Shown: positions 5,301-53,293 of the stretch, piece after piece
Layout of the letters: the number at the start of each line of letters is the position of its first letter
How positions within the stretch are numbered: position 1 is the first letter of the stretch
Origin: Laetmonice hystrix
Lineage: Eukaryota
Length of the DNA stretch: 64,000 nucleotides
NCBI GenBank assembly: GCA_965235115.1
Contig: OZ249445.1
Location: 15,190,001-15,254,000 of the forward strand
Direction of reading: 5' to 3'
The notes under the pieces: generated by a model
Database searches by the model: none
What the model saw: only the letters and a program-made list of their open reading frames with translations
Told to the model about the DNA's origin: nothing
Translations under genes and position numbers: made by a program

Positions 5301-8300
5301 TGAATGATTTAGTAGGGTTTGTTCACAGAGAGCCATAATTCAGTCGAGATGAATGCCATGTGACACCGTCCTTTCACAACCTGCGATGCTATTCTTTACG
5401 GCAAAGTGCCTTCCTGTCATCCTTGCCACAGGATTTTGTTTCAATCTTTTTGTTTCTTACTTCCTTAATCCGAAAATATTCACTTAAGCCTGTGAATGTA
5501 CCTTTAGTTTACTAAAATAGTAAGTCAGTTTACAGTAAATGTTTATCAGTTTCTATAAACATTCCAGCTCATTTTTATAACTTCCAAGTCCCGTGGGTTG
5601 TGGGGCTGTAGGCAAGTGACTCGAGAATAGTGTGATTCGATCGGTTTGCAGATTCTATGATAATATGAAAAAAAAGAGTGCTCGTAACCATGATAAGGGG
5701 GCATTCGGCTGTTCATCTGTTTTATGGTTGCCTGTCGATCTAAATTTGCGGCATAAATAAGATAGGACACTCAACAGTAATTTGGTGAGTGATGAAGCCA
5801 CATAAAAATTGTAGTATTCGAGATGATTTAGCAAATTCCACATTACATGTTGGTCAGAATTTTATGACTTGCTTGCACGAGGATTGTATAAACATGTTGT
5901 TGCGTGTTATTTTGCTATTAATGTTGTACACAGTGACGGGGTACGTTTAACATTTCGTTTTTTTTTATATGACATCAAATTCCGAAACCTTTAGTGCCAA
6001 GATTGCTTGGTAAAGTACCCAACCCCAAGGCTTTGTAAGTTACTTTCTTGGATCTGCTAAAGTCCAAGTACAATGTAAAAAAATCCTTGTCTGGAGAGAG
6101 TGACTCGCTTCATGCAAGCAGCCGTGACGTAGAGTTGATCAACTTTACGGGCAGAGCGTTGCCGGGTGTAGACACAAGGAATCCCGTACAAGTAGTATAA
6201 CGAATTGACCGTTTGTATCAGGCTACTGCACCTCTTATACATTCCGGGACCGTCTTAGACATTTCAGGAGGTAACCGTGGGATTAACCTGAGACTGGTTC
6301 ACACAGTAGCAGCCTTATGCTTTGAAACCTATGCACCCTGTGGGTATATACGCAGTGTTCATTTTCCTTCTAAGTCTTCGTATTGATTTATGACGAAAGA
6401 AATGATTGATTTTATGATCTGTGAAGGCATCTAATGGCTGGAAATCGCTCGACAATTGCCAGATCGATGTAACCGTGGTTGCAATTGAATCATTTTGATA
6501 CGACTGATCTTAGTAATTGTCATCTCGGGGATTGAGAACAGCTCTGATGATTAACTTTATATGATTCTCACCACCGACGATTGACTTTTTTCATAGAATT
6601 ACCATTCTTGTCGTGAGGTTGGGTTTACAAGCATTGATTTTGACCTTGAAACGCGTCAACATCTGCTCGGTAGGCTTAAGGAATTATCTGCTAGTTATAC
6701 TACTGATAACTGCGATAATCAATGTTAGAATGATGAATTGACAGATCTGGGAGGTGGTGAAGGATGGCTAGTATGTGAGTGAGCCTCGCCTTGCGGTTTA
6801 CATCTGTTGGTTATTGGTGGTGTTGTGATGAGAGCTGGTGGTTGGAGGGTGATTAGTGAGGCCCCGACTGTCTCGTCTGTCACAGCCACCTGGTCCCACC
6901 ACTCCCCGCTCACATTGGGAGGAGGCAGTCTGTCACGGCTTTCTTCATGGTGTCACGCTTTTATTGTGGAAAGGTAGAAAAAAACACGTTACAATGCCAG
7001 TTACAATGACACACATGACAGACATGTTTGTGAATGTATAATGATTTAAACAGAGGTGTGATGTAGATCACCTGTAATCACAAGTCTTAGAGAGTTTGGC
7101 ACGATGCGGTTTGGAATGAGGCTGGGAAGAATAAAAGGGGAATATGTTGGTTACAATGGTGTTAAATACTTGCAAGTTGGATGTGGCACTAGGGATAGTA
7201 TATTGAGTATGCCTGGAGTGGCAGTCTTGGGGAGACCTGACCAGAGATAGTATATTGAGTATGCCTCGAGTGGCAGTCTTGGGGAGACCTGACCAGAGAT
7301 AGTATATTGAGTATGCCTCGAGTGGCAGTCTTGGGGAGACCTGACCAGAGATAGTATATTGAGTATGCCTCGAGTGGCAGTCGTGGGGAGACCTGACCAG
7401 AGAAAGTATATTGAGTATGCCTCGAGTGGCAGTCGTGGGGAGACCTGACCAGAGATAGTATATTGAGTATGCCTCGAGTGGCAGTCGTGGGGAGACCTGA
7501 CCAGAGATAGTATATTGAGTATGCCTCGAGTGGCAGTCGTGGGGAGACCTGACCAGAGATAGTGGCAGTCGTGGGGAGACCTGACCAGAGATAGTATATT
7601 GAGTATTCCTCGAGTGGCAGTCGTGGGGAGACCTGACCAGAGATAGTATATTGAGTATTCCTCGAGTGGCAGTCGTGGGCAGACCTGACCAGAAATAGTA
7701 TATTGAGTATTCCTCGAGTGGCAGTCGTGGGGAGACCTGACCAGAGATAGCAGATTGAGTATGCCTCGAGTATCAGTCGTGGGAAGACCTGTTGGATTCC
7801 AAGGAGTCCGTTTGGATACAGCAACCAATCATGTGCCTCCAAACATCCCATCCTTACAGTCTCCTGATTGGTGCGTCGACAGTGTGGCATTAGAGATAAT
7901 GTGTTTCCAGATTGATCATCTAGCTACATTAGATAATAAAATCTTGAATCAAATGTGAGAAACGTCAGATTTGCCAGATTTGATCCTATCGTGCAGTCAT
8001 TGCCACCATAGTGAGAGCATAGTGAGTACGCATGCATGAAAAATGTATGAACTCCTTGGTGAATAGAGACCACGTCCTGTTGTAGGCCTAAGTTCTTTGG
8101 GTAAATTGAGTTTGGGCTGCTGATTGTTGTGATTAATTGAAGTGGGAACGTCCGAAGTGACAAGTAAGAGAGAGTAGCAGGAAGAAGATGAGAGTGAGAG
8201 AGCTGAGTGAGAGGCTGGCGGCACGGACTGTGCACAGAGAGCGATGGCCGGTGAATATTTAAACAGTGTATTCAGAGCTGCTGCCGTCAGAGGGATCATC

Positions 8301-14300: not shown

Positions 14301-17300
14301 GAATATTTAATTTAACAATCATTGAAGGGCCAGGGACTAAAGTGATTTCTTCATGCAATCTCCTTTTCAACTTCGAAAAAAAAAGTTCCGTGTGCTAGCC
14401 GTAGGCAGTGAGTAATTGCTAGAACAGCAGCGTAAGAACAAAGCTTGCCTGATGAGGAAGAATGAGCAGTGGATGTTATTATTGGGGTGTACGGGTCGTT
14501 ACAGGAGGCGGTGGGCTGGGATCCTCACCGTCATGGGAGGCAGTGGACTGGGATCCTCACCATCATGGGAGGCGGCGGGCTGGGATCTGACCGTCATGGG
14601 AGGCGGTGGGCTGGGATCCTCACCGTCATGGGAGGCGGTGGGCTGGGATCCTCACCGTCATGGGAGGTGGTGGACTGGGATCCTCACCGTCATGGGAGGC
14701 GGTGGGCTGGGATCCTCACCGTCATGGGAGGCGGTGGGCTGGGATCCTCACCGTCATGGGAGGCGGTGGACTGGGATCCTCAGTCATGCGAGGCGGTGGG
14801 CTGGAATCCTCACCGTCATGGGAGGCGGTGGGCTGGGACCCTCACCGTCATGGGAGGCGGTGGACTGGGATCCTCACCGTCATGGTAGGGGGTGGGCTGG
14901 GACCCTCACCGTCATGGGAGGCGGTGGGCTGGGATCCTCACCGTCATGGGAGGCGGTGGGCTGGGATCCTCACCGTGATGGAAGGCGGTGGGCTGGGATC
15001 CTCACCGTGATGGGAGGCGGTGGACTGGGATCCTCACCGTGATGGGAGGCGGTGGGCTGGGATCATCATCCTGGTCCAGGTTAGGCCATGGCTGGACCGT
15101 TAATTGGGGACCTGAGTGGTGAGTCTGAGCTGATGTCGGGGTTGGAGCCTGACTGGCTGAATACCTCTGCCCACACACCCTCAGGCTAAGGACAGTTAAT
15201 CCACTGTCGCCTCCATAATGGATGAGTGGAGTGGTGGGGAGAAGTTTGCAGATTACCCCAGGGGTAGGGCCAAGATGGGTGCCGAGTGCACGAATGTCCA
15301 ACACTTGTTCACCCATTCTCTTTCTACTGCTTTCATCCCAAAACCTGCCCGAATCTCTGCCTGCATCGTGTTCCGAGAACCGGCGTCGTTGGAATGAAAT
15401 GGAACCAAGAATGAATAGAAAATGGAGGACCCCGAGATAATTCACAACAGTGGGTTAAAACTTGTTATGGGGTAAACCCTACAGGATGGGTACTGGAATA
15501 GATGAACCTATTCCTATGTAAAATGTCGGTAGCCGTGAGTAGTATATGAGATGTGAGTGTTAGTGCTGGTAGTTATGACGAGAACTTTGCCAGGATTGTC
15601 AGGGTGAGGCCTGGCCGTCACTGAGTACGTACGTGTAACGTTCTCGACGGTAATGGACAAACTGACCGGAATGGAGGATGGCCAGTTAATGCCAAGATGG
15701 ATGTTGTCATTGATAGACTGGATATACCTTGAATTACCCCTGCCGGCCCCGACAGGAGCTTCTATCAATAATATAGGGGGTAATTATATTCCGCCAGTCG
15801 GAGACGTTAGTCACAGTGGTTTCAGTTGTTGGGTAGAACTATATTGTGCCCTAGCCTGGAGAAGGTAATTGTGTGTGTGTGTGCTGTGTTAGAATGGAAG
15901 TATGTACTGGTGTAAGATAGAAGCAGCCCCACCCCCCCCCCCCGCCGGCCTCCGACTTTACCGCGGTTATACCGTACGTCATCAGGCCTCAGGGTCTCTC
16001 ACCATATTGACGACGTTCATGGGACGTCATACCAGAGTGTGCACTTATTGCACATGTCGTCCATACCGCCTCCTGTCTAACCTCACACCCAGAGCACCCA
16101 TCTGTCACCTCCTGTCTCAGCCATCTGTCACCTCCTGTCTCAGCCTACCATCTGTACCACTCAACTGTCCCCCACCGTCCGCGGAGACTTGCCGCCTTTC
16201 TCCGTATTGCCTGCTATATTGTTTTATCCCCCTACCTACTCCCTGTAATATTGCTTGCTGATGAGAATATGTTACAGTGGCAGCCGTCCCAAGTGATACA
16301 TCGTAATGAAAGCTGCAGCTGTAGCTTTTCAAAATATCATTAATCTCCTCGACGTGGCCAGGGAGACTTTTCTTGACATATCCGATAATCTCAGCTTGTT
16401 TGTCGTTAATCCTGTGATTATTGTGTCTCTCGCTGCAGATCATCCTCCAGTCGCGAGATTACAATGCGCTGTCGATGAGCGTGATGGCCTTCGTGGCCAT
16501 GCTCTATCCACTCGAGTATATGTTCCCCGTCATTCCACTGCTGCCTACCTGTATGTCATCTGCTGAACAGGTACCTCCTTTTTATCATCCCACTCAACAA
16601 TCTGCAAATCGCTTATAATTGAATTCCATACATCAGTATAAGAGATTAATTTCATTTTAAGGCCAAAATATACTTATCTTGGGACAGATTATATTTTGAA
16701 TGGTTGATGAATTTGTTAATTCTGTCAAAACTTTGGAACGGGCCGTATTGTGTGTATTGGTCTTGAGTTTTACAACTGGTTATGTTTTTTCACAATAATG
16801 ATTCCTTACCAGAAAGATTAGAAAAGTGCCGTACTAACTGTAGAGTAGTAAATTGGCTTGAGTTTTCCGAAGAAGTAAGTCTGAGAGTGTGGTCAATATT
16901 TGATTGCAGTTGTTGCTGGCTCCGACGCCGTTCATCATCGGAATCCCGTCCAGCTTCCTCATGTACAAACAGAACTTCAGATTGCCCGACGATGTCTGGC
17001 TTGTTGACCTGGATTCCAACAGGGTGAGTGACTGCCCACTGTTGTCGGACGGAAAACCTAGATGGAACATTGATGAACTGAATTGATTACAAAATGAAGA
17101 GTGGTTTTCTAAACAGTTTAAGCTTATTTTTATTTATTTTATTACGAAAGTAAGTACTGGTGAGTCACTTTTGGATCTGAGGTGATCTTGTAACCGTTTT
17201 GCTGAAACGTAACCAGTTTATGGATGATTTTTTTTTTTATACTATCTCAGTTACTAAGTCCGGGACGGTGGGACCAGCATCGTGCAATTAACCAGGCTCA

Positions 17301-41300: not shown

Positions 41301-44300
41301 TTTTCAGTCTCATTGTGTAGAGAAAACTTTTCAAGATAAAATTGGCTTTTATCTAAACATATTTTGTAAGGAGAATAATACCAATTTATTGAAACATAGT
41401 GTCTAATTTGGTTTTGTTTGACAAGATTGCCCAGATCATGAAATCTTTGTAAGACCTGACCGTGTTGTTGCACAGATGATGGCGTACGGGCGTAAGAAAC
41501 GTTCGGGGAGCATTATGAGTGTAAAAAGTCATGTCAGCCAAGGTTATCGCTACACGGAGGGTCGTGTTGCAAACACCAACCTACCCAGCCCCGAAACCAA
41601 CAGAACATACGTCTTTGAAGCACTAATAGGTTGGTAACACCACTCAGCCACAGTTATTCTTTCCTATGTTTCTGTTGTTTCTCACTGAAAACGGAATCAA
41701 GATGAGCCAGTGTTTATTTGTAAGAGCCAGTGCTAGTGCTCTGTTTGTCGTGGTTTGCCACTGATAGTTTGGTTATTGCAGGCAAGGAGCGGTCGTGGTT
41801 GTGGGACCAGATGCAGTTCTGGGAGGATGCCTTCCTTGACGCAGTGGCCCAGGAACGAGATATCATCGGCATGGACCAGGGTCCCACTGAGATGATGGAG
41901 AGGTACATCTCTTACTATGTTCATCCTACTCAAATTACTTTCTGTGGAAAGGCAAAATAAATCAAATTCATGGGTGTTTTCAACAAATAACTGAAGTTTA
42001 CGTATTGTTGGTTCCTGGTTGCCTTGATGTTGTCATGATGTTAGCTCAGTGATGATTGGAAGGATGTTTGGAAACATGGGACTGGATCTATACTTTCACT
42101 GCCGATAGGTACAACTCGTTAGGGGATCCAGAGAAAAAGCGTTTAGAACATGACGAAGATCGACTCCTTGCGATTCTGCTCTACAACATGATCGCCTTCA
42201 TGATCATGATGCGTGTCAGTAAGAACGAGATCCGCCGCAAAGTGCGCCGTCTACTGGGCAAGTGCCACATCGGCCTCGGCTACAGCCAGGAAGTTAATAA
42301 CGTCCTGGACCAGATCAATAACCTGGCAAGTAAAAACCTAGTAACTAGTTCTTCTAATCGTGTCGTATTATCTTAAATAACTTTAATTATTGTGAATTTC
42401 AGACAAAAAGATGCTTTCATATAGTTTTATTGTGATTATTCCGGATCAAATATCATCAAGTTAAATATATGTTCATATATTTGCAATATTTGTATAGAAA
42501 TTCTCCAAAAATGCGGAAAGCATAAGTGTGTTGAGGTTGTGAAATGTCATAGGGCAAATCCATTTGCTTCTAGACCCATACAAGTTTCACTATTCAGACT
42601 TTTGTTTAATACAAATTTTAGAATACCCAAATCCTTTGTAAGCTGTGCAAGAAATATAAAGAATTGAAACCTCGGGGAATATTTGTTAGTTTGACATCAG
42701 ATGTATTGACACGTGTCAAACGTTGTTGAATGTACGAGTCCTAGGGCCATACCTAATAGGGTCGCCTTTAATTTATTTCACCTTTTTGCCAATTTTTCCT
42801 AGGGTCTGGAAGCAAAGGTGAGTTGTCAGGCTTAGGCTGGTTTCCAATCAGAAATCCTTTCTTCATTACATTGTACCAGTTCACGCCAAGGCGAATGAAA
42901 TTAGATGGTCTAGTGTGTCACAGACACGGGACATTTGTACAAATAAAATGATTTTCATATGTAAGGGAGTAGAAATGAGACATTGAAATGGGCAAAGAAC
43001 GTCGTTGAATAATCTTGCCATTGGTGACCTTTCTCTGGTGTTCGCAAATTATCAATCTTTAGGTCAGGTAAAGTATTTCCCAGTCGGTCAAATTTACTCC
43101 GATGGAACTATACTGGGGGGTTTTATTTTATCAGAAAGTTTTTTTTCAAAACATATAAACTAGAACATTTTTGTGTTTATTTATATTTTCATCCTAGCAT
43201 GTTGCGTTTTCCATATGTCTATACATGTTTTATTTAATGAATGTTTTTCCGTATAATTGGTGTGAGTGTATCATGTACTAATCTACTCTGCTCTTGTACA
43301 TATAGTTACTACTTGATACCTTGAGTGGTGGATACAGGTTGTTTGTACATGAGGTAATGGTGGGTCAATCTGTTGACAGCACGGTAACGACATTGACCTG
43401 AAGCCACTTGGTAGCCGCATGATGCAGAAACAGTCTTTCACGGTTCACTGGGGGCCTGACAACACTGGTGACATGCTCTTTATGGAGGTCAGTACTAGCG
43501 TGTAGGTCAGGGCAACAAGTAACACAAGTCTTTCAATCATTTCCATATTCGATATGTTAGAGTCATTCAAGAACGATTTTTTGGTGCCAATATTACTGTT
43601 GTGCCAGTATAAGATATCACACAGATATTGTTTTGTAATATCTTTTGGTCGGGTGTTCCTCATCATGTCGTTAGCTTGTCGTGCGTTAAAGTCCCCATTG
43701 AAAATACATTGGCGTTAACGATACGACAAGCTAACGACATGATGAGGAACACCCCCCAGTATTGTCATGCGGGAGTGGAGTCTAGCAGAAGTCATGCAAG
43801 CTTTCAGTGAAGTCCACCATTTTCCCAGCAGGCCTGACAATGGTAATGATGTATTGTGCCTGTTTCAATCAGAGATTTACGACTGAATGTTGCAGGTGTG
43901 TGATGATTGCATCATCCTGCGCAGTGTTACAGGCTCTATTTGTGATCGATGGTGGTATGAGAAACTAGTCAACATGACCTACTGCCCCAAGACCAAGGTC
44001 CTCTGCTTGTGGCGGCGACACGATGGCAAGACTCAGCTCAACAAATTCTATACAAAAAAGGCAAGTCAAGGTCGCATTGAAATAGGACAGATTGAAATAA
44101 ACATAACATCTAGAGTCGTTCTTTGAAACGTTACGTATTGTCATGTGTTTGAAGTTTGTTACTGCCGTGTGTCTGTAACAGCCCTTAGTAAGACGGGTTT
44201 TAACCAGCTCTAGTTAATAACGATTTCTGGTTATTAACTAGCTATAAGTTAACTAGATCGGGCTTAACGATGTTTAGTAAGACGGGCCCCTGAGGTATGA

Positions 44301-47300
44301 TTCTGTCTGTTGCAGTGTAAGGAACTCTACCTGTGTGTGAAGGACTCCATGGAGAAGGCGGCGGCCAGGAACAATGGCAAAGTTCCAGGTAGGACACAGT
44401 GGTGGAGGTCTTCTCCTGCTCAGGGGGGAAGCTCTCAGACGGTGCTGCCGTCTGGAGGCCAGCACGCGAACCAACCCACCCGTGCTGTTCACTCAGTAGT
44501 CAGAACTAGTTTTGAAAAGAGAGATCTGCTTGTTCGTGTTGACAGATCGAAACCAGTAGAGCTTGTAGTGCAGCGCTAAATGAGTAAAAAACATTGTTCC
44601 TAGTGTATGGAAGATGGGAGTAAGTTTGTATAAAAGGGTATTTATATTTGATAATAGTGTTAATGTTCTTCCCTGGATTGATTCATGTGTATCCTCAGTG
44701 TATGGTTAAGTATTATGAGGTGTACTAAACAAGGTAATATCTAGCTGATGATTTCTGCTGATGGTTAGCTGTTAAACTCTGTCAGACTGGTCCAGACATG
44801 ATTATTAACTATAATTTTTAGCATTGCTTTTGGCAAGACCTGACCTCTCTCCAAAGAACAAATCAGTAACTTTTTAATAGATAATATTAATAATGAAAAG
44901 AAAGAGAAATTAAAATTGACATTCACTGATGCTATGAGTCATTCATTGTAGGGGGGGGAGATGCTTTTGCTGAAGGTGCTTGGTGAAAATGTCTTGTGTC
45001 AACCTGTTTTTATTTGTCGCTATTGACTACCGTTGAATCCCTTAGTGATCACTTCCTGTTGGTAGGCATGGCAACCAGTTTGGTGCTCGGTGACTAGTAA
45101 TGAGCCAGACCAGGGGAGAAACTTTTACAGCAGTCTTTACATTTTAAATTCCCGGGTATTGTTCTTACTGGCATTAAAGGACTTGAGCGAAAGGGGCAAC
45201 ATTTACGGTAGAAGATCCCTGTCACTACATTGTTTTGGCTGTACTTTGGCGGAATCCTGAGGTGTAAGTTACTATGTCAGAGGGAGAGAAGATTGTAGGT
45301 GGGGTTCGGGGTTCGGGCTGTGTTACCCCCTGTAGGCTGTCTCATTCCTAGCCCACCAGGCGGCGTATGTTGTTGTATGATGACTAAGTGTTGGTGTTTG
45401 CCCAGGCCCTGAGTTGGGTGGGGAATTTCCTGTTCAGGATATGCGGACCGGGCAGGGCGGCCTGCTGCAGGTCTGCATGGAGGGAATCGGACTGCTCTTC
45501 GCAAACAGCAAGGTGAGTAGCTGTGACCTTGACCTAATTTGTCATGACCTGGTTATATTTTTTTTGCCGACTCGAGTTGACCTAGTTAGTCAGGGCATGA
45601 GGTGAGGGTCACCGTTAGATATGAACAGGATTGCTGCTTAGGCCAAATGTAGGTAGATAGGTAGGAAAGTGACTCTTACCTGTAGGTGTTACATACGTGT
45701 AAAGAACTTCGTTTGAAAATATTTAACTTTTACAGTAAGACATGTTGAGTGTAAATATTTCTAAAGTATTGGTACCAACAAGGCCTGCCAGTAGTGGTAC
45801 ATGTTGTATATATATATATATGTATAGACATCAAAACATTTGGAGATCATATAAAGTATTAAAGGTTCTGCTATATTCTAGCCTAGAAGCCCTGCCCTAA
45901 GATTGGCGTGACCACTCCCATGTGTTTGTGACCTGTAGAGAGTGTAGGTGTCCATGTGGTAGACTGCAGCCCGTGGCCATGTAGAATTTGGAGAAGGGTT
46001 GTAAATATGGGGCACTAAGACAGGTGGCTAATACCTTACCTGCTCCAAATTCACATTTTCATGTGCTACTAGGTCAAGTCTGAAGGACTCCAGAAATATG
46101 AAAACAAAATTCAAATATTCAAAGAAAATAAATGCACAAATACACAATAAATCGCTACTTAAAGTCTTAAAGAGTAAAGACATGCTGCTGAAGCTTAAAT
46201 GTAGAATTATATGAATTGTTGACTCAATGGTAATGACCCCGTGACAATCTGTAAATTGATAGTCGTTCGTCTACAGCATCCTATAACTGATATGCCCACA
46301 TCCAAATTGTGCATTCTTATTCTGAAATCTCTGCTGAAATCCATGGTGTCATATTTTATTCGGAAATCCATGTGCTCATATCCATAATGTCATATGTTAA
46401 TTCGGAAATCTCTATGCTTACGTCTATGACACTATGGTTTTATTCTGAAATCAATATACCTGCAACTATGATGTCATGTTATTCGGAAATCCATATGCCC
46501 ATGCCTATACTTCCACACAATATGCTAGTTGATATTCCGTAAATCCATGCCCACATCCATACCAAGTTGTATGTGAAAAGTGCGCGGAGACTCAACCTGT
46601 TGGACAGAAACACGCAAAGACATGAACAGAAACACAAAACGTGATTTAACCAACATGTAGATGTAGATGAAGCCACCCAGAGAGGAACTAGCAACATTTA
46701 GCGTGGTGCACACAGCCACACCCCCACAGTAGACACCCACAGAGCTGCACCTGTAGCGGCTGAGGTAGTTGCACTTACGACCTGTTTAGGAATGATGTAC
46801 TGGCTCGTGGCTGTCACTTCATAAACTCCTGTACTGCACACCATCTGCTCTTCTTACCTGGGTGTGTCGTCATTCTTCTCCCCCCTTCCCAGCTGCTGCA
46901 ACAGCTGCCCAGCAGTTGCTGCCAATGGGAGTGCAGACAATGGCTGGAACAGGCACTATAGCCGCAGAATTTGGAGTATATTTCTTAATTTAGAAAGAAA
47001 AGAAAAATTGCACGAAATCCAAAATATTTGGCCCTAAATTTATTATCATTGTTTTGTTTTGTTTTTGAATCCCTACAAAATAAAGAGGGGTTAGGTTAGT
47101 GAACTGCGTGCTGCCACCAAGCCAAGCCACTGTGTGCGCCCTGCGCCATTCCTACCCTTACCCATCTCTTTGTTTGCCTCTAAACTTGTACAAGTCTCTC
47201 TGAGCTCAGCTCTGCTCCAATGTGTTCCCTACACAGCTGCCCCCTCCGTAAGGACACGGTAAAAAAAACATCAAGGCTTGGACCTTGCTGTCCTACTGTC

Positions 47301-50300
47301 TCACATTCTGCCCACCTTGGTCACACCACCAATCACGCCTAGTGATCGTATAGATGCACCCAACACTGAAACCCCCACCACATGCATGCCTTGTCAGTAT
47401 CCACTGCAGCCCTGCAGATCCAAGATGGCTGCATGTGAGTGAGCACAGCCCCAAGAGGAGTGAGGTTCAGCCAGTGTGGTTGGCTGTGTCCATACATATC
47501 GTCGTTGTGTTAACTGTTGTGCTGGTGACGTGTGGAGGTGTCATCAAGTTGGATATTTTGCAGTGTCTAGCTGTGGTAGTGTAAGTAGCAGAGGTTGTAC
47601 ATTAGGGTAGACACAACACCGATGCCGACAATTGATGAACATAGTGGTACATCGAGATTCAGGCAGCACGAATAAAGGACATGGAAAGTGGCAGACCCTC
47701 TCAAAGCTCTATTCCAGCCCAACGAAGCACAACGTCCAAACCAAAACTGGATTCCGATCGCTTCCGCAATGGGTGAAATTTTTACTTGAATCTATTTTTC
47801 CATTTTTGATATTAACCTTCCCCCCTTTTCCAATCGGTAATATGTTCTCCCATTTCTGGTCCCTCCACACCTCTTTATCCAATCCTCTTGATTTTTCATA
47901 CCTCCCTATTCAGACTTTAAAACGGAAATTGAAATTTTTCAAAGCGACAAAAGCTATCAAGGATTTTACCCTAATTTTTGTGCTGTATCAGTTTGCATTC
48001 AAGCAAGCCTCTGTTCTGATTGCGACAAAAAAGAACAAACTGGAAAAAAAAATCGAGTTCAACCCCCGCCATTTGCATGGCTTGGACCTTGTCATCTGAA
48101 AATTGCATGGCATCAGTGACAAGCCAATCAGAAAAGAGGAAGGCATTTACCTGCACGAATGAGCTGACGCGGCTGGTTTTGTGTTGTGTGGGAACTTTTG
48201 AGATGGTCTCACTTTCTGCTGCTGTTGACGGGCAGGGACAGTGTCCAAGAGTCAAGTGTCCAAAAACCAAAACAACAAATGGCAAAACCTAGAAGTCTCA
48301 AATGCTAAAACTGACCTTTTCTCTTTTCTACATGCATCGCTTCTGCGGATGGGTTCAGGACTTTGAGGTACGGGTGGCTTTTATACATGGTTGGATGCAC
48401 TTGTGCATTGAGTGATGAATAGACGTATACCTACATCGGTAGTGGCCATCTCATAAGTTCAATTTGGTTGTGCTCATTATTTTGCATGCGATTGGATGTC
48501 ATGTACTGCCATGTTTGTGTTGCTCTGAAATTCGCACACTCGACCATTGCAACCACTTGTGTTGAGCCGGACCGTACGTCGCCCCTGTATCTCATACAGC
48601 GCCCTGGAGTGGCCGTTTGTGGCGACATCTCGGGGCTGTCACGTCTTGCGTACCCTCTCCGGGGTGTCGGTCAAAACCTTCATGTGTCAAGCCCAGTGGC
48701 GGGCGTCTCTACACTGAGGGCAATAGCACGGAGTCACTCCGACGGAAAGAGAATAGAAAAAGGAAAAAATAAAAACGGTGTTCAAAAAGTGTAAACCTCA
48801 CTCGACACTGGATACGACATGATGGTGGGGGCCGGCACGGTGCTTGCCACGTGTATGCACCCCAGTGTTGTTACCTCCATATGTATACATCGAGATATAT
48901 ACGTGTACATACAGTCGCTGTTGTCAATGTCGGAATCTGTGCAGCTTGATATGACCTTTGACCAGCTCCACGTGTCTTGACCATCGACCTGTAACCTTTC
49001 TCTACGTTTAGCGCGCCTTTCCGCACCGACCCTCTTTTTCTGCATTGTGCTTTCCACCCGCCCCCTAGTGTTCACCTGAAGGACCAGACAGCAAGCCTGA
49101 TAGTTCACAATAACAGCGTCATGAGATATTCAAAGGTCTGGCACCAGCCAATCAGAGATGTTCAGAGTTGGCACCAGCCAATCAGAGACGAGATTATAGT
49201 TTGTACTTACATATGACACAAGTGGTGATGCTTGCCTAGTTTTAGTGTGTCCACCTTTCTGATTGGTTGCTGACTCCTTCATTTTTGATGTTTCAGTTCT
49301 TTATTGAGCTAAGTCGTATCAAGAAATGTTTCACCATGAAAGGCGGCATATTTGTACTAGAGGAATTTGGTAAGACCACTGTAGCACTTTTTTGGTTCCT
49401 CTTTACCTCCTCGTAGTTCTGCTTTTGACTTTGGTTTCCTGTACACACATTTGATCATGGATTGAGGCCAGTGGGAATGTGATATTGTGTTCACGTAGCA
49501 TGTCGAATGACGGTGCACATGCTTCCCTGCTGTGCTTGTATATATATTATATACATGTATCGAGTGTCTTTCAATATGATGGTCTGTACATGTGTGTATG
49601 TGTACCTCATGGCCCAAGGTTGAGTTTGCGGCATGAGAACATTTACAGCCTTCGTGCGTGGGTGTGGGCGCGTGCGCGTGTGGGTGTGCGTGGGTGCCAG
49701 TGTCGCTACAGTCCTCAATGGCCAAACCTTTCCTTATTGCTCCTGACTGGATATCAGACTTTAGACAGAATAAAGCGGAATCTCATCAGGTTTTCCATGA
49801 GAGATAACACGACATGCTGCAATATCCGTCAAGTTATATCCAGACAGAGAGAGAGGAATTCATTGGTCATTGATGGAAAGAGTGACACGCGACTGTACAC
49901 GTGACGCGGGGAGACCCGGCCACCTGGTGGTGATAAACAGAACTAACCCTAAGGTTGGCGTCTTTGGTTAAGATAACCCCCTAGCAATAATAACCTTCCT
50001 AAAGGATCAAGAGACGTAGAAGAAAATTAAGCCTTAATAAATTCACTTCACTGAACCTGATCTGTGTAGATTGGTTTTTACTGCTCAGGTTAGTAATATA
50101 GAACATTAACAACAACAAAAGTCGTGTATCAGACGTTGATATGTGATATGATATTCCGTCAGACCAGGATTGACTCAACTTAGACTAAAGGATTTCTAAA
50201 TTACTCCCACGTAACATTGCTGCTAAATTCCATTTCATCTTAAACTCTAACTTTATATCACCTAATTAGAAGTGGAAAAAACGTACCATTCCTAAAACCC

Positions 50301-53293
50301 AGTGAAGTTGGAAGTTAAGTGCATGTGGCTTTGTTGAACCTTTCCAAGTTGTTGGTTTATCTCTCAATTAATGAAAGCCTACGTTGGTTTGGTTTTGGCA
50401 GATTTTGACTTAAAAGCAACCTGTTTGTGAGTTACTTGTAGCGCCAAATTCCCTGGACTGTCGTGACATCGTTTTTGCTTACACTATGATTGGCTTCTAG
50501 TTAAGTAAACGTTTTTTCAAAACGTTTAAAACGGACATCTCCAAGACATCTTATCTCATCAGTTGTAACGGCTTATAACCAGAAATGCATGGTAATTGGT
50601 AGTGGTTTCAACTCAAGCAAATGTCAAATTCCGGTAGGAGTTGAAATTATTATTTAGATCCTAGAAATATACAAATCGTCTCTCCTATAACAATTATACA
50701 CAGTATTATAGAGTCTCGAACTATACATGTATTTTAATTGTAAGAAAAGAAAGAAAGCTTCTGTGACCAATTGCCACGAACATTTGACCTTTAACCCCAA
50801 AGCATGCAATCTTTGACCTTTGTGAGAAGTTCTTGCATGATGTTGGTGTCATTTACTCAGGGTAAATTGTTTCACTACGTTCATAAAGAAAATTTACATG
50901 TTGAATTTGCAGATCCCAAAACTCGGAAAATAGTTCAGAGGAAGTACAAATCAAACATGGTAAGTCTTTACAAAACTTCATTGATTAAGATCTACGAGAG
51001 ATTTTAAGGAATCCCATTATTTTGTGGTGTGAATATTGTGACTGCTGAACAAATTGCAATTTAGGAAAGCGTGTCTAACAACGACAAGGAGACAGGGGTT
51101 GGAGGGCCGGGGGTTGGGAGATAGTGCACAGACCTGCCAGCCTTGTATGAAACAATTTGTTACGATGTACGATACTTTTTCCGTGCTTTGGAATTACGAA
51201 GTTGTCAGATCTGATGGAGAGAGCTGCTATATCTCATATCGTAATTCTCATTCACCGGTTGTTTGACCCGTTTTCCTATTTATGCCTTTAATTTTCTATT
51301 AGTGGTTGTTGTGTTGAAAAGGCGTGGTTTCATGCTAGTGTCCAAATAACTTCAATCCATGTTTTGTTTCACCTGGAAACTCGTAATATTTGGTAATCCC
51401 AAGATCCTCCCTTTTTTAGTAGGTTATCAGAACATTGTTTTCATGCAGTTTGGTTAAACGTTTTGGTATAGCATGACGAACGGTGCCACTTCGTTCTGCC
51501 TTGTATTAGGCTGTAAAACGAATCCTTAAAGGAATGGAACCGGGGTTACTGTCCTAGCCCCTTTATCTGGCAATTAGTCTTAAGACAAATCTGAAGATAT
51601 CCTATTCTTATCTCATATATATCAGTATGAAATTCAATCCTCCAAAACTGCATGCAAGAACATGTTCTTGAAAGACTATTACCCTATCATTTATTTGCAT
51701 TGTTTACCAAATTTTGTTTATCCCTGCATGCTGTAGGCCAATCAGCTAGTCCTGGCTATGCATAGAATCATTGCCATCAAGGTGCAACAAACGATGGCCT
51801 TCAAACTTGACGCCATAGCCAATCAGAGTGAAGGGAAAGGTTCTGTTGGAGAAGCCGGTCACTATGGAAACGGCACGGAAGGTTCACCATCCAACGAATC
51901 GAGTGACACGGAAACTGTGACGTCAGACTGGGACACCATCAGCCTGAGTCCACACAGCCCAGGCGAAAGTGACGTCACAGAAACCGACAGCCAACTGGAA
52001 GCCGACCCGGACAGAGTGGGTCTGGACTCGTGTCCAACAAATAACAATTTTTACAAGGACCCCGGTTACAGTGACGGAGAGCGGGCGTCGTCTGAGCCAG
52101 GCCCAATGTCCAATCAGATCGGTGACAAAAACGACGACTCTGATGAGCCGACACCAGACGGTGCACGTGCCCAGAAGGGGGCGCTGTTAAACGGCGTGTT
52201 GCAGGTCTGTGGAGAGGCGGGAGACATGAGCGGAGGTAGCTCGCTGAGGGTTGGAGACCTTCCCACTGCTGCCACCAACCACCACCACCAACCCTGATCC
52301 CGTGAGCTACATCTAAACAGCTCTTCGACCTCCTCTCAGCTCAACTCACACTCTCGCATGTGGCATCTCGCTGACTTATTAAGACCTCCTCTCCTTTTTT
52401 AACCGGTAGATTGCGTTAACCTGCATGTTGTGTTTTCAGCTTTATTGTGATATTACTACATTATTTGCATTTGTATTAACAGTGAAAAGACTTTGAGCTT
52501 GTTCCCTTTCAGAACATTTTCTACTGGCAAAGGTTTGCAGTTTGGCACTGGTTATAAATAACTTATTACTATACTGACGATGTATTGGTGTGGTATTGTA
52601 CAGCTTCTGAAAGCCATGTCTAATCTCTAACATTCAGTGGAGAAACTAACAAGACAAAACGGTTTCATTTACTTATCAACCGGGGTATGGTGCTAATTGT
52701 GGTCAGCGGTCGATATCATCTCGTCAGGCCCTACTAGTCATTTTTATAGATTAGTATCGCTATGAAATTACACAAGTTCGATGATCTGGAGATAGGCCTG
52801 TATAGGGATATCTAAGATTTAGAAGGCTGACTTAATAGTGTTTGTGCGTGAGAGCGGTTGTAAGCTTAAGATCAGCATCTTGCATTAAACTTGGTATTCG
52901 TATATTTTGCATAGATTCTGAAGAATAGGTGAATCTTTAAGAATGTAAAAAGGCATGTTTACTACTTAACGAAGGAAACTTTCTCTCTGACCAACACCAT
53001 CAGATGGGCCTACAGTATGACCTCTTTGATGTGTAATAGATACTTGGATAAGGTCACAACGAAATCCTGCAAATTCGCTCTTGAAACGTGAAATAATAAA
53101 TGGTTGCCTGCAGTAGCGGAGCTGGAGGTGTCAGTGTGACCCATGAATGTGACCTGTCTATGTTTGTGTGTTTCAGGCTGACCAGATCTGTTACGCGGTG
53201 CTCTGCGTTTTCTCCTACGTGGCAGCCGGGATGGAGGCCCGCCAAAAGTTGTTAGAGGCGGCGCAGCGTGCCAACGTCTCCAAGACGCTATAG
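2257..53293 (+). CDS. MADD: MAP kinase-activating death domain protein / Rab3 GDP-GTP exchange factor (DENN domain), 5'-partial spliced gene, 29 core coding exons in window
   Basis: Exon peptides match hallmark MADD/AEX-3 motifs in the correct order ([107 protein letters not shown]). All intron phases join; summed length is 4642 nt = 1 + 1547 codons. Confidence 0.97.
2783..2941 (+). CDS. MADD: MADD core exon w2 (cDENN)
   Basis: ttgtag|...AAG|gttagt; [53 protein letters not shown]. Confidence 0.96.
7194..7791. repeat. Minisatellite, 52-bp unit, about 11 copies, one internally deleted
   Basis: Unit ccagagatagtatattgagtatgcctcgagtggcagtcgtggggagacctga; the copy near 7553 is shortened via AG microhomology. 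Confidence 0.96.
8310..8500 (+). promoter_or_regulatory. Candidate internal promoter: YY1-type motifs plus TATA box
   Basis: ggccgccatttt near 8310, tataaaa near 8471, aatggcggc near 8487; CpG-containing patch inside an AT-rich intron. Confidence 0.35.
8571..8642 (+). CDS. Candidate alternative first coding exon ([24 protein letters not shown]), phase 0 to w3
   Basis: Two in-frame ATGs (8571, 8598), AGG|gtaaaa donor, TATAAAA about 100 nt upstream. Confidence 0.3.
10031..10078. repeat. 12-bp tandem repeat (agagaagtgttg) x4
   Basis: Visible in sequence. Confidence 0.9.
10198..10717. repeat. 104-bp tandem repeat x5, nearly identical copies
   Basis: atctctatgtcg recurs at 10201, 10305, 10409, 10513, 10617. 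Confidence 0.96.
14504..15064. repeat. G-rich minisatellite, 32-bp unit (gggatcctcaccgtcatgggaggcggtgggct), about 17 copies
   Basis: Directly visible tandem copies. Confidence 0.96.
16439..16570 (+). CDS. MADD: MADD core exon w3 (cDENN)
   Basis: ctgcag|...CAG|gtacct; [44 protein letters not shown]. Confidence 0.96.
16910..17023 (+). CDS. MADD: MADD core exon w4 (cDENN)
   Basis: ttgcag|...AGG|gtgagt; [38 protein letters not shown]. Confidence 0.96.
17251..17571 (+). CDS. MADD: Putative MADD cassette exon encoding (AQ)n and polyQ, 107 aa, phase 0-0
   Basis: T-rich tract then ctcag|; donor GGG|gtatgt; 321 nt, open in the MADD frame; mixed CAA/CAG and GCT/GCC codons. Confidence 0.7.
19537..19667. 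repeat. 42-bp tandem repeat x3
   Basis: gaatatagcgtacgatatgcctgtgttatctcggtgtattag repeated. Confidence 0.95.
21048..21173. mobile_element. Short MITE-like element with GGCCC-type termini and internal perfect hairpin
   Basis: ggccccgggttttagtttg / caaactaaaaaccgggccc termini; tcagtcttaagatt-ca-aatcttaagactga at 21075-21104. Confidence 0.55.
22676..22750 (+). CDS. MADD: MADD core exon w5
   Basis: aactag|...CAG|gttagt; [25 protein letters not shown], matching the family LPEPE...LKKHLKQ segment. Confidence 0.92.
23040..23349. repeat. Minisatellite, 29-bp unit (gagagatattgcctggggatattgttact), about 10.5 copies
   Basis: Directly visible tandem copies. Confidence 0.96.
23887..23928 (+). CDS. MADD: Putative 42-nt MADD cassette exon ([14 protein letters not shown])
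   Basis: CTAAT branch point, tttctttcag| acceptor, CAG|gtataa donor, phase 0-0, no stop. Confidence 0.45.
24938..24950 (+). promoter_or_regulatory. CTCF-like motif
   Basis: ccaccaggtggcg. Confidence 0.4.
25010..25063 (+). CDS. MADD: Putative 54-nt MADD cassette exon ([18 protein letters not shown])
   Basis: cttgtag| acceptor, TCA|gtaagt donor, phase 0-0, no stop. Confidence 0.45.
26637..26807 (+). CDS. MADD: MADD core exon w6 (dDENN start)
   Basis: ttctag|...ATG|gtaagc; [16 protein letters not shown]...[21 protein letters not shown]. Confidence 0.96.
26830..27032. mobile_element. MITE-like element, about 203 bp, about 52-bp terminal inverted repeats
   Basis: Left aagtgctgaacccaccaaggtgattccccttgcgacgcccatgcgattttga; right end is its reverse complement with few mismatches; no ORF. 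Confidence 0.8.
27211..27369 (+). CDS. MADD: MADD core exon w7 (dDENN)
   Basis: tatcag|...CAG|gtaagt; [31 protein letters not shown]...KLARTQ. Confidence 0.96.
28530..28752 (+). CDS. MADD: MADD core exon w8
   Basis: ttacag|...ACA G|gtgggc; [14 protein letters not shown]...[12 protein letters not shown]. Confidence 0.95.
28905..29005. other. 101-bp intronic fold-back (hairpin) element
   Basis: About 45-bp arms, attctacc...tcgcgagacg..agagcatgtgagatac / gtatctaacatgctctc..cgtctcgcga...ggtagaat, 10-nt loop. Confidence 0.8.
29075..29185 (+). CDS. MADD: MADD core exon w9 (Ser/acidic)
   Basis: tttcag|...CCA G|gtacag; [37 protein letters not shown]. Confidence 0.94.
29985..30202 (+). CDS. MADD: MADD exon w10 (acidic low complexity)
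   Basis: tttcag|...AAG|gtaagc; phase 1-0, open frame EVYCEDHM...PPRPPPGK. Confidence 0.85.
30448..30662 (+). CDS. MADD: MADD exon w11 (FRYD-repeat segment)
   Basis: aatcag|...AG|gtgggt; phase 0-2, open frame AEGDHFRYD...PEVTK. Confidence 0.8.
30850..31180 (+). CDS. MADD: MADD exon w12 (proline-rich)
   Basis: tttcag|...AAG|gttagt; phase 2-0 joins w11; [16 protein letters not shown]...GVGISK. Confidence 0.82.
31198..31384. repeat. Minisatellite, 23-bp unit (tcctttacctggtatggacaatc) x8
   Basis: Starts 18 nt after the w12 donor. Confidence 0.96.
31514..31619 (+). CDS. MADD: MADD exon w13
   Basis: tttcag|...TTC G|gtaggt; [35 protein letters not shown]. Confidence 0.8.
32259..32297 (+). CDS. 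MADD: Putative 39-nt MADD cassette microexon ([13 protein letters not shown])
   Basis: ttacttacag| acceptor, CGG|gtaaga donor, phase 1-1 matching the host intron. Confidence 0.5.
32422..32435. promoter_or_regulatory. RFX X-box motif (one of about 8 in MADD introns)
   Basis: gttaccatagcaac; others at 2117, 4339, 20636, 22755, 27854, 34100, 37597. Confidence 0.5.
35702..35770 (+). CDS. MADD: MADD exon w14
   Basis: tttcag|...CTT G|gtatgt; [23 protein letters not shown], preceding the conserved GNRKALV. Confidence 0.8.
36366..36474 (+). CDS. MADD: MADD core exon w15
   Basis: ctgcag|...AG|gtagag; [15 protein letters not shown], matching family GNRRALVDQKSSVIKH. Confidence 0.93.
36667..36853 (+). 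CDS. MADD: MADD core exon w16
   Basis: ttgcag|...GTG|gtaggc; [22 protein letters not shown]. Confidence 0.95.
37062..37256 (+). CDS. MADD: MADD core exon w17
   Basis: ttacag|...ATG|gtcagt; VFKGIV...[28 protein letters not shown]. Confidence 0.95.
37481..37586 (+). CDS. MADD: MADD exon w18
   Basis: tgacag|...GTA G|gtgcgt; [13 protein letters not shown]...AETRSLHEE, echoing family DTRSLKEE; a second GT 4 nt upstream would break frame. Confidence 0.82.
38814..38924 (+). CDS. MADD: Putative 111-nt MADD cassette exon with NAGNAG acceptor and GC donor
   Basis: cag|tag| tandem acceptor; CAG|gcaagt donor; phase 1-1; [37 protein letters not shown]. Confidence 0.6.
39564..40201 (+). CDS. MADD: MADD exon w19 (large low-complexity exon)
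   Basis: ctccag|...GGG|gtaagg; inside ORF 39545-40276; ends [14 protein letters not shown], echoing family RGTLSDSEIE. Confidence 0.88.
41476..41629 (+). CDS. MADD: MADD exon w20
   Basis: gcacag|...ATA G|gttggt; ends [10 protein letters not shown], matching family QRVYLYEGLL. Confidence 0.9.
41782..41902 (+). CDS. MADD: MADD core exon w21
   Basis: ttgcag|...AG|gtacat; [34 protein letters not shown]. Confidence 0.96.
42109..42325 (+). CDS. MADD: MADD core exon w22 (so-called death-domain region), GC donor
   Basis: cgatag|...CTG|gcaagt; [22 protein letters not shown]...[12 protein letters not shown]...DQINNL. Confidence 0.94.
43380..43487 (+). CDS. MADD: MADD core exon w23
   Basis: tgacag|...GAG|gtcagt; [36 protein letters not shown]. 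Confidence 0.94.
43651..43754. mobile_element. Palindromic MITE-like element, copy 1
   Basis: About 40-bp arms gggtgttcctcatcatgtcgttagcttgtcgt / acgacaagctaacgacatgatgaggaacaccc; related copy at 59787-59902. Confidence 0.8.
43896..44060 (+). CDS. MADD: MADD core exon w24, GC donor
   Basis: ttgcag|...AAG|gcaagt; [10 protein letters not shown]...[24 protein letters not shown]...NKFYTKK. Confidence 0.95.
44316..44388 (+). CDS. MADD: MADD core exon w25
   Basis: ttgcag|...CCA G|gtagga; [18 protein letters not shown]. Confidence 0.95.
45406..45512 (+). CDS. MADD: MADD core exon w26
   Basis: gcccag|...AAG|gtgagt; [36 protein letters not shown]. Confidence 0.95.
47237..47257 (+). CDS. MADD: Putative 21-nt MADD microexon (LPLRKDT)
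   Basis: ttccctacacag| acceptor, ACG|gtaaaa donor, phase 0-0, upstream TGC and pyrimidine tract. Confidence 0.5.
48359..48367 (+). CDS. MADD: Putative 9-nt MADD microexon (DFE)
   Basis: CTGAC branch point, ctttttctcttttct tract, TGC motifs, ttcag|GACTTTGAG|gtacgg; phase 0-0. Confidence 0.65.
49297..49369 (+). CDS. MADD: MADD core exon w27
   Basis: tttcag|...TTT G|gtaaga; [24 protein letters not shown]. Confidence 0.94.
50913..50959 (+). CDS. MADD: MADD core exon w28
   Basis: ttgcag|...ATG|gtaagt; [16 protein letters not shown], matching family VVSHKYKTPM. Confidence 0.92.
51737..52297 (+). CDS. MADD: Putative alternative last coding exon of MADD (186 aa plus stop)
   Basis: ctgtag| phase-0 acceptor 21 nt upstream of ORF 51758-52297; begins [12 protein letters not shown], paralleling [12 protein letters not shown]. 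Confidence 0.7.
   Translation, partial: ANQLVLAMHRIIAIKVQQTMAFKLDAIANQSEGKGSVGEAGHYGNGTEGSPSNESSDTETVTSDWDTISLSPHSPGESDVTETDSQLEADPDRVGLDSCPTNNNFYKDPGYSDGERASSEPGPMSNQIGDKNDDSDEPTPDGARAQKGALLNGVLQVCGEAGDMSGGSSLRVGDLPTAATNHHHQP
53177..53293 (+). CDS. MADD: MADD canonical last coding exon w29 (ends TAG)
   Basis: tttcag|; [18 protein letters not shown]...KTL*, matching family AHEICYSVLCLFSYVAA. Confidence 0.94.
   Translation, partial: ADQICYAVLCVFSYVAAGMEARQKLLEAAQRANVSKTL

What the first reader, a model, noticed from the sequence alone, without database searches (positions are those of the whole stretch)
48311..48373. 9-nt microexon (DFE) with textbook eMIC/SRRM4-type 3' splice-site architecture
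Seen: CTGAC branch point, a pure pyrimidine tract, two TGC motifs, then cag|GACTTTGAG|gtacgg. It sits in the phase-0 intron between FANSK and FFIEL, so inclusion adds three residues without frameshift. Established: neural microexons activated by the eMIC domain of SRRM3/4 (ancestral Srrm234) have UGC motifs between the pyrimidine tract and the acceptor. From memory, other animals' MADD has a very short insert at about this junction; this needs checking. Inference: a neuron-specific microexon in a vesicle-trafficking GEF, invisible to ORF finders.
Basis: partly seen in the sequence, partly recalled or inferred. Interest (0 to 1): 0.8.

Follow-up and report, generated by a model that had tools for sequence, protein, structure and literature searches.

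The report
Ancient 9-nt MADD neural microexon

Summary
Window 48359-48367 (GACTTTGAG) lies between cag| and |gtacgg in the phase-0 intron between ...FANSK (exon ends 45512) and FFIEL... (exon starts 49297) of a MADD/Rab3-GEF orthologue. The closest named relative is an annelid.

The same tripeptide, DFE, sits at this same junction in over 90 database proteins. These come from insects (including Drosophila melanogaster), crustaceans, spiders, mites, Octopus, a brachiopod and a nemertean. Sea urchin has ESE there and a mammal has ERK.

I found the stand-alone 9-nt exon ag|GAYTTYGAG|gt in the homologous intron of six other genomes. One is an annelid whose gene model lacks it. Only third codon positions vary.

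The literature already covers this exon:
- The zebrafish madd 9-nt exon is neural and eMIC-dependent.
- The fly Rab3-GEF 9-nt exon is listed as eMIC-dependent.
- A 2026 preprint names the MADD 9-nt microexon as one of only two neural exons ancestral to bilaterians.

This genome also encodes an eMIC (SRRM_C) domain. No RNA run of this species was available, so neural-specific, eMIC-dependent use here is inferred from orthologues and not shown.

The exon lengthens a loop of MADD's C-terminal PH/PTB-like domain. The finding is real, correctly interpreted and already known.

The parts
45406..45512 (+). Upstream constitutive exon of MADD, ending ...GLLFANSK. Its donor is AAG|gtgagt.
   Evidence: tblastn of the Capitella and Venturia MADD proteins.
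48311..48315 (+). Candidate branch point CTGAC, with the A at 48314, 45 nt before the microexon.
   Evidence: It is the only YTRAY within 80 nt upstream. Its use as a branch point is inferred, not shown.
48315..48329 (+). Pyrimidine tract of 15 nt (ccttttctcttttct), set 30 nt back from the acceptor.
   Evidence: A comparable displaced tract lies upstream of the exon in Tubulanus, Lingula, Venturia and Homarus, and Lamellibrachia has a shorter one.
48333..48346 (+). Spacer carrying two TGC (UGC) motifs, at 48333-48335 and 48344-48346. It lies inside a 61-nt AG-free zone.
   Evidence: At least one UGC lies within 60 nt upstream in four other species measured and, read from the printed sequence, in D. 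busckii. The printed Lamellibrachia flank shows none.
48357..48358 (+). Acceptor AG of the microexon.
   Evidence: It is invariant in the 8-species alignment.
48359..48367 (+). The 9-nt microexon GACTTTGAG, encoding Asp-Phe-Glu, phase 0 to 0.
   Evidence: DFE sits at the same junction in over 90 orthologous proteins. The orthologous stand-alone exon is present in six other genomes, and Capitella has a GFE variant.
48368..48373 (+). Donor site GAG|gtacgg.
   Evidence: The GT is invariant, and +3 is A in 7 of 8 species.
49297..49369 (+). Downstream constitutive exon, [24 protein letters not shown] plus one base. Its acceptor is tttcag|.

Best explanation
Window 48359-48367 is this species' orthologue of the 9-nt MADD/Rab3-GEF microexon, which has been described as ancestral to bilaterians.

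In most cells the splicing machinery probably joins 45512 directly to 49297. The microexon is too short for exon definition. Its acceptor is also weak, because the pyrimidine tract and branch point sit 30-45 nt back from the AG.

In neurons, the eMIC-containing isoform of Srrm234 probably acts through the UGC-bearing spacer just upstream of the acceptor. It would recruit or stabilise the early 3'-splice-site factors, so that the exon is included.

Inclusion adds Asp-Phe-Glu without a frameshift. The three residues go into the loop between two beta-strands of MADD's C-terminal PH/PTB-like domain (Pfam PH_MADD). This probably changes a binding surface of this Rab3/Rab27 exchange factor in neurons.

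Shown here: the sequence, the position, the orthology and the purifying selection on the peptide; alternative use in other species' annotated isoforms; and the presence of an eMIC domain in this genome.

Inferred from orthologues: inclusion, neural restriction and eMIC dependence in this species.

Inferred from a predicted model only: the structural effect.
For: - The host gene is a MADD orthologue and the junctions are exact.
- DFE sits at the same junction in 91 of 155 long MADD proteins that matched the junction pattern in the first tally. They come from Hymenoptera, Diptera, Lepidoptera, Coleoptera, Odonata, crustaceans, spiders, mites and Collembola.
- DFE is also there in D. melanogaster, Octopus, Lingula and Tubulanus.
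- Sea urchin has ESE and a mammal has ERK at the site.
- A stand-alone ag|GAYTTYGAG|gt lies in the homologous intron of Tubulanus, Lingula, Venturia and Homarus, D. busckii and Lamellibrachia, whose gene model omits it. Capitella has ag|GGATTTGAG|gt.
- Only codon third positions differ among the DFE exons, and the intron flanks do not align.
- Isoforms with and without the insert are annotated in Venturia and in Octopus sinensis.
- Zebrafish madd DreEX0044304 is 9 nt. Its inclusion is 38% in neurons and 0 in heart, gut, kidney and skin. It falls by 39 points on eMIC loss, and the human orthologue rises by 73 points on eMIC expression (PMC12626424).
- Fly Rab3-GEF DmeEX0005937 is 9 nt and is listed as 'MIC eMICdep' (PMC8797185 supplement). 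Its introns of 3.3 and 3.2 kb match the 2.9 and 3.1 kb around the D. busckii DFE exon.
- A preprint names the 9-nt MADD microexon as one of two neural exons ancestral to bilaterians (10.64898/2026.09.05.749416).
- This genome has an SRRM_C/eMIC match above Pfam's cut-off, with a second collinear exon.
- The acceptor architecture is rare in the window, found at 2 of 4034 AG sites.
- The insert lies in PH_MADD, in a loop between strands of the AF2 model.
Against: - There is no transcript evidence from this species. Both run searches returned only genomic DNA contigs.
- Neural restriction and eMIC dependence therefore rest on fish and fly orthologues.
- Torres-Mendez et al. 2022 did not count this exon among the four eMIC exons shared by fly and mouse, so the regulation may not be uniform across lineages.
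- UGC placement varies between species: -15 and -26 here, but -43 or further in Tubulanus and Lingula. No UGC is visible in the printed 100 nt upstream of the Lamellibrachia exon.
- All listed RefSeq isoforms of Lineus, Haliotis and Liolophura lack the insert. I did not examine their introns, so I cannot say whether that reflects loss or missed annotation.
- The structural role comes from one predicted model, and the loop has lower confidence than its neighbours (about 83-84 against 92-96).
Confidence: 0.8

Rival explanations
1. The exon is real and orthologous, but in this species it is not a neuron-specific, eMIC-driven switch. It could be constitutive or broadly included, or controlled by another factor that reads pyrimidine-rich or UGC-like intronic elements.
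For: - No RNA data exist for this species.
- All Drosophila proteins retrieved carry DFE, so inclusion can be high.
- The exon is not among the four eMIC exons reported as shared by fly and mouse.
- UGC position is not conserved between phyla.
Against: - The fly exon of this size in Rab3-GEF is listed as eMIC-dependent.
- The zebrafish exon is neural and eMIC-dependent.
- Both isoforms are annotated in wasp and octopus.
- The preprint infers neural specificity as ancestral to bilaterians.
- This acceptor has two UGC within 26 nt and a 61-nt AG-free zone.
- The genome encodes an eMIC domain.
Confidence: 0.15
2. It is a chance AG-N9-GT match or a decayed relic that the spliceosome no longer uses in this lineage.
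For: AG-N9-GT is common: there are 17 in this intron and 12 are stop-free. Gene models of several lophotrochozoans lack the insert. There is no RNA evidence here.
Against: - The exact protostome peptide, with intact AG and GT, occurs once in the window against 0.02 expected.
- Another annelid keeps the same exon even though its gene model omits it.
- The codons differ only at synonymous sites across eight genomes, while the flanks are unalignable.
- The acceptor architecture is found at 0.05% of AG sites.
Confidence: 0.04

Closest known systems
Protostome MADD/Rab3-GEF 'DFE' microexon, for example Drosophila Rab3-GEF DmeEX0005937 (9 nt, eMIC-dependent; PMC8797185) and the RefSeq isoforms of wasps, crustaceans, spiders, Octopus, Lingula and Tubulanus
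   Same: The gene, the intron, the phase, the 9-nt length and the peptide DFE are all the same. So are the flanking AG and GT and the stand-alone position in the middle of a kilobase-scale intron.
   Different: Only synonymous third-position bases and the intron flanks differ. This copy has UGC motifs closer to the acceptor (-15 and -26) than most of the others. I matched the fly exon to DFE by its size, its position in the gene and the intron lengths in D. busckii, not by reading D. melanogaster DNA.
Vertebrate MADD 9-nt neural microexon (zebrafish DreEX0044304 and its human orthologue; PMC12626424)
   Same: The junction in the C-terminal PH-like domain, the 9-nt length and the phase are the same. 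It is neural-enriched and dependent on SRRM3/4 (eMIC). A preprint groups it with the insect exon as ancestral to bilaterians.
   Different: It encodes ERK in the mammalian isoform seen here, not DFE, and sea urchin has ESE. The peptide is therefore conserved within protostomes but not across Bilateria.
APBB1 (Fe65) 6-nt neural microexon
   Same: It is the other microexon inferred to be ancestral to bilaterians. It is a very short in-frame insert in a signalling adaptor. From memory (Irimia et al. 2014), it lies in a PTB domain. PTB is the fold class that the PH_MADD model matches best.
   Different: It is in a different gene, has a different length (6 nt) and encodes a different peptide. Its position in a PTB domain was recalled, not tested here.

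Membership tests
Bilaterian-ancestral 9-nt MADD/Rab3-GEF microexon | The host gene is the MADD/Rab3-GEF orthologue. | tested here: met
   tblastn of Capitella and Venturia MADD proteins lays collinear exons across the window. Orthologues carry uDENN, DENN, Death_MADD and PH_MADD.
Bilaterian-ancestral 9-nt MADD/Rab3-GEF microexon | Same intron and phase: between ...(F)xxSK/NQ and (F/V)F(I/V)xL... in the C-terminal PH-like domain. | tested here: met
   Protein alignments put the insert in the same column. The homologous intron was located in eight genomes.
Bilaterian-ancestral 9-nt MADD/Rab3-GEF microexon | Nine nucleotides bounded by AG and GT, encoding the lineage's tripeptide (DFE in protostomes). 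| tested here: met
Bilaterian-ancestral 9-nt MADD/Rab3-GEF microexon | Alternative inclusion that is enriched in neural tissue. | not testable with these tools
   Only DNA contigs of this species were served. Alternative use is annotated in Venturia and Octopus and measured in zebrafish.
eMIC (Srrm234 / SRRM3 / SRRM4)-dependent microexons | UGC motif(s) close upstream of the acceptor. | tested here: met
   TGC at -26 and -15. At least 2 TGC within 30 nt occurs at 5.8% of AG sites in the window.
eMIC (Srrm234 / SRRM3 / SRRM4)-dependent microexons | A long AG-exclusion zone with the pyrimidine tract and branch point set back from the acceptor. | tested here: met
   The AG-free zone is 61 nt, the 15-nt pyrimidine run starts at -44 and CTGAC has its A at -45. 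The AG-free zones are 82-147 nt in the four other species measured. The feature list is the one given in PMC8797185.
eMIC (Srrm234 / SRRM3 / SRRM4)-dependent microexons | The genome encodes the eMIC domain. | tested here: met
   PF15230 SRRM_C scores 29.9 bits (cut-off 27) at G000:C18:20459758-20459838(-). A collinear second piece lies 3.5 kb downstream on the same strand. The open frame reads ...RRKGSPSHLDRRRITR.
eMIC (Srrm234 / SRRM3 / SRRM4)-dependent microexons | Inclusion falls when the eMIC domain is removed and rises when it is supplied. | not testable with these tools
   Shown only for orthologues: zebrafish dPSI -39, human +73, fly 'eMICdep'.

The most novel reading that the evidence does not exclude
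The invariant Asp-Phe-Glu, kept from annelids to flies, may be a neuron-specific docking or autoregulatory element on the PTB-like C-terminal domain of MADD. If so, both neural microexons inferred to be ancestral to bilaterians (MADD 9 nt, APBB 6 nt) remodel loops of the same fold class. That would suggest the ancestral eMIC programme began as a switch on PTB/PH-type adaptor surfaces. Nothing here excludes this reading and nothing here shows it. It rests on one predicted model, fold matches, and a recalled position of the APBB1 exon.
Probability: 0.15. Interest if true: 0.5.

Novelty: already known. Interest (0 to 1): 0.25.

Why it matters
This is a clean positive control for the scan. A 9-nt exon that no ORF finder can see was called correctly from splice-site grammar alone, and orthology confirms it.

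Biologically it adds little that is new. The MADD microexon is already annotated in dozens of genomes, has been knocked out in zebrafish, is listed as eMIC-dependent in flies and has been described as ancestral to bilaterians.

There are three small additions:
- The exon exists in annelid genomes whose gene models omit it. Lamellibrachia has it, and Capitella has a probable GFE variant.
- The peptide DFE is almost invariant across protostomes (Artemia has DYE, Biomphalaria ELE, and Capitella probably GFE), whereas sea urchin and a mammal carry other tripeptides.
- The insert maps to a strand-connecting loop of a PTB-like domain.

For annotating this genome, MADD should be given two isoforms at this junction.

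Tried and rejected
- RNA evidence. Two run searches, one over the intron and one over exon-rich 41476-42325, returned only runs of one sample. Laying all four on 44250-50200 showed contiguous genomic contigs, no joints and no RNA. Usage in this species therefore could not be tested. The DNA contigs listed no variant within 48230-48428, although the intron is otherwise polymorphic. Nine variants were not shown, so I give this no weight.
- Full-text search for 'Rab3-GEF' plus 'eMIC' found nothing. The information was in a supplement.
- Locus look-ups failed for isoforms that are not a gene's longest product: P0315, P0064 and P0334. I used other species or the longest isoform instead.
- Intron flanks do not align between phyla. 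Conservation of the TGC motifs as homologous positions cannot be claimed, only recurrence of the architecture.
- I considered chance. It is rejected for the DFE exon but true for bare AG-N9-GT.
- I did not attempt a complex prediction, because no specific partner is supported.

Full report
THE OBSERVATION

One search shows, on the + strand, aaaaCTGACcttttctcttttctacaTGCatcgcttcTGCggatgggttcag|GACTTTGAG|gtacgg. CTGAC is at 48311-48315 and a 15-nt pure pyrimidine run is at 48315-48329. TGC occurs at 48333-48335 and at 48344-48346. The acceptor AG is at 48357-48358, the 9 nt are at 48359-48367 and the donor is at 48368-48373.

The exon upstream ends ...CTCTTCGCAAACAGCAAG|gtgagt at 45512 (LFANSK). 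The exon downstream begins tttcag|TTCTTTATTGAG at 49297 (FFIE). Both junctions are phase 0, so inclusion adds Asp-Phe-Glu with no frameshift.

IS IT MORE THAN CHANCE?

An AG, nine bases and a GT is not rare in itself. The 3784-nt intron holds 17 such sites, and 12 have no stop codon. Two things single this one out.

- The pattern AGGAYTTYGARGT occurs once in the whole 64-kb window on both strands, against 0.02 expected from dinucleotide-preserving shuffles.
- The acceptor is unusual. It has at least two TGC in the last 30 nt, an AG-free zone of at least 55 nt and a pyrimidine run of at least 12 nt set back from the AG. Only 2 of 4034 AG sites in the window have all three.

THE HOST GENE

tblastn of two proteins found with a conserved exon of the window lays collinear exons from the DENN core to the C-terminus. 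The two proteins are Capitella teleta R7VCW9 and Venturia canescens MADD isoform X4. The gene is the MADD/Rab3-GEF orthologue. The best named match is an annelid protein.

THE DECISIVE EVIDENCE IS COMPARATIVE

I aligned the two flanking exons to the full-length MADD proteins recovered. The wasp protein reads ...[21 protein letters not shown]..., a sea-urchin isoform reads ...SK-ESE-AFIEL... and a mammalian isoform reads ...FMHNQ-ERK-VFIELNHIKKC.... Sister isoforms lack the three residues.

Two searches restricted to this region then returned several hundred MADD proteins. DFE sits at this junction in 91 of the 155 long proteins that matched the junction pattern in the first tally. These cover Hymenoptera, Diptera, Lepidoptera, Coleoptera, Odonata, Hemiptera, termites, Collembola, Daphnia, shrimps, lobster, barnacle, spiders and mites. 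DFE is also there in Drosophila melanogaster, Octopus, the brachiopod Lingula and the nemertean Tubulanus. In Tubulanus the surrounding sequence ([27 protein letters not shown]) is nearly identical to the window's. Variants are rare: DYE in Artemia and ELE in Biomphalaria.

Isoforms with and without the insert are annotated in the same species, in Venturia and in Octopus sinensis. The exon is therefore alternative in both an arthropod and a lophotrochozoan.

At the DNA level I fetched the orthologous loci and located the homologous intron. A stand-alone ag|GAYTTYGAG|gt lies inside it in six genomes.

| Species | Locus and position |
|---|---|
| Tubulanus | L001 43525-43533 |
| Lingula | L004 21212-21220 |
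| Venturia | L005 20466-20474 |
| Homarus | L006 72972-72980 |
| Drosophila busckii | L007 14939-14947 |
| Lamellibrachia (annelid) | L008 41785-41793 |

The deposited Lamellibrachia gene model omits the exon. Capitella has ag|GGATTTGAG|gt (GFE) behind a pyrimidine tract with two TGC (L009 4657-4665).

In the eight-way alignment only AG, G, TT, GAG and GT are invariant. Among the seven DFE exons the differences are confined to third codon positions, and the flanks do not align at all. This is the signature of selection on the peptide and the splice sites, across an intron that is otherwise free to drift.

WHAT THE LITERATURE ALREADY SAYS

- Zebrafish. Supplementary data of the microexon knockout study (PMC12626424) list madd DreEX0044304, length 9. 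Inclusion is 38% in HuC neurons, 16% in telencephalon and cerebellum, and 0 in heart, adipose, intestine, kidney and skin. It falls by 39 points on eMIC loss. In human the neural difference is +21 and the rise on eMIC expression is +73. The RT-PCR primers translate to GGLLQV and LNHIKKC, which lie in the two exons that flank this junction. The products are 100 and 91 nt. Thirty codons plus one base is 91, so nothing else lies between them.
- Fly. The supplement of Torres-Mendez et al. 2022 (PMC8797185) lists Rab3-GEF DmeEX0005937, 9 nt, class 'MIC', 'eMICdep'. Its flanking introns are 3.3 and 3.2 kb. Around the D. busckii DFE exon I measured 2.9 and 3.1 kb. I take them to be the same exon but did not read D. 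melanogaster DNA.
- The main text of that paper counts only four eMIC exons shared in position by fly and mouse, and Rab3-GEF/Madd is not among them.
- A September 2026 preprint (10.64898/2026.09.05.749416) states that only two neural exons are confidently inferred to be ancestral to bilaterians: microexons of 6 and 9 nt in APBB1/2/3 and MADD.

The exon in this window is that exon.

THE REGULATOR

The window's genome (G000, 627 Mb in 35 contigs) has a match to Pfam SRRM_C, the family that covers the eMIC region. The match is above the curated cut-off, at C18:20459758-20459838 on the minus strand. A collinear second piece lies 3.5 kb further on. The frame reads ...RRKGSPSHLDRRRITR.

The cis features listed for eMIC exons in PMC8797185 are long AG-exclusion zones, UGC close to the acceptor, long UCUC-rich pyrimidine tracts and strong branch points. 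All are present here: a 61-nt AG-free zone, UGC at -26 and -15, ccttttctcttttct, and CTGAC.

The four other species measured share the long AG-free zone (82-147 nt) and at least one UGC within 60 nt, but at varying distances. The printed Lamellibrachia flank shows no UGC. The architecture mostly recurs rather than being conserved position by position.

WHAT COULD NOT BE SHOWN

Both searches for sequencing runs returned only runs of one sample. Laid on 44250-50200, they are contiguous genomic contigs with no joints. There is no transcript evidence from this species. Inclusion, neural restriction and eMIC dependence here are inferences from orthologues.

WHAT THE THREE RESIDUES DO

In Tubulanus MADD the insert (residues 1548-1550) lies in Pfam PH_MADD, which spans 1513-1604. 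An AlphaFold2 model of that region was built on a 33-sequence alignment. It has mean pLDDT 80.8 and puts ANSK-DFE in the loop between strands 51-56 (GIGLLF) and 64-67 (FFVE). Confidence there is somewhat lower than in the neighbouring strands.

Foldseek matches the model to PTB domains (Numb, X11, GULP1, ARH) and to FERM F3 lobes at E about 1e-4. The microexon therefore lengthens a surface loop of a PTB-like module by an acidic-aromatic-acidic triplet. What that loop binds is unknown. This step is inference.

VERDICT

The exon is real by orthology, and its mode of regulation is probable but untested in this species. It is not novel: it is one of the best-conserved microexons known, annotated in many genomes and described in the literature.

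The modest additions are the annelid copies missing from gene models, the near-invariance of DFE across protostomes against other tripeptides in sea urchin and a mammal, and the loop position in a PTB-like fold.

Noticed in passing
window 47237-47258: Another first-stage note (s1-311090) proposes a second microexon here, 21 nt, LPLRKDT. Between cag| and |gt the piece is actually 22 nt. In the frame set by the upstream exon it reads LPPP followed by a stop. It would shift the frame, so it is not a clean in-frame microexon.
   Followed up: partly
window 51758-52297 and 53177-53287: Two alternative C-terminal exon types are both present in the window...MHRIIAIKV... and [18 protein letters not shown]. 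Both types recur across taxa in alignment A1 ([11 protein letters not shown] against IVLAFHRVVSV). This agrees with note s1-311002 on alternative last exons.
   Followed up: partly
G000:C18:20456197-20459838 (L002, L003), minus strand: Two collinear exons match Pfam SRRM_C (the eMIC region). They are presumably the 3' end of this species' Srrm234 gene.
   Followed up: partly
L008 41785-41793 (Lamellibrachia satsuma) and L009 4657-4665 (Capitella teleta): The deposited annelid gene models omit the microexon. The Lamellibrachia intron nevertheless holds ag|GATTTTGAG|gt, and the Capitella intron holds ag|GGATTTGAG|gt (GFE) behind two TGC.
   Followed up: yes
window 415-871, 7151-7890, 14416-15042: Long tandem minisatellite-like repeats in the MADD introns give spurious repetitive ORFs.
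   Followed up: no
window 44250-44300: Very high summed contig depth and many loose ends in the DNA runs suggest a dispersed repeat just upstream of the exon at 44313.
   Followed up: no
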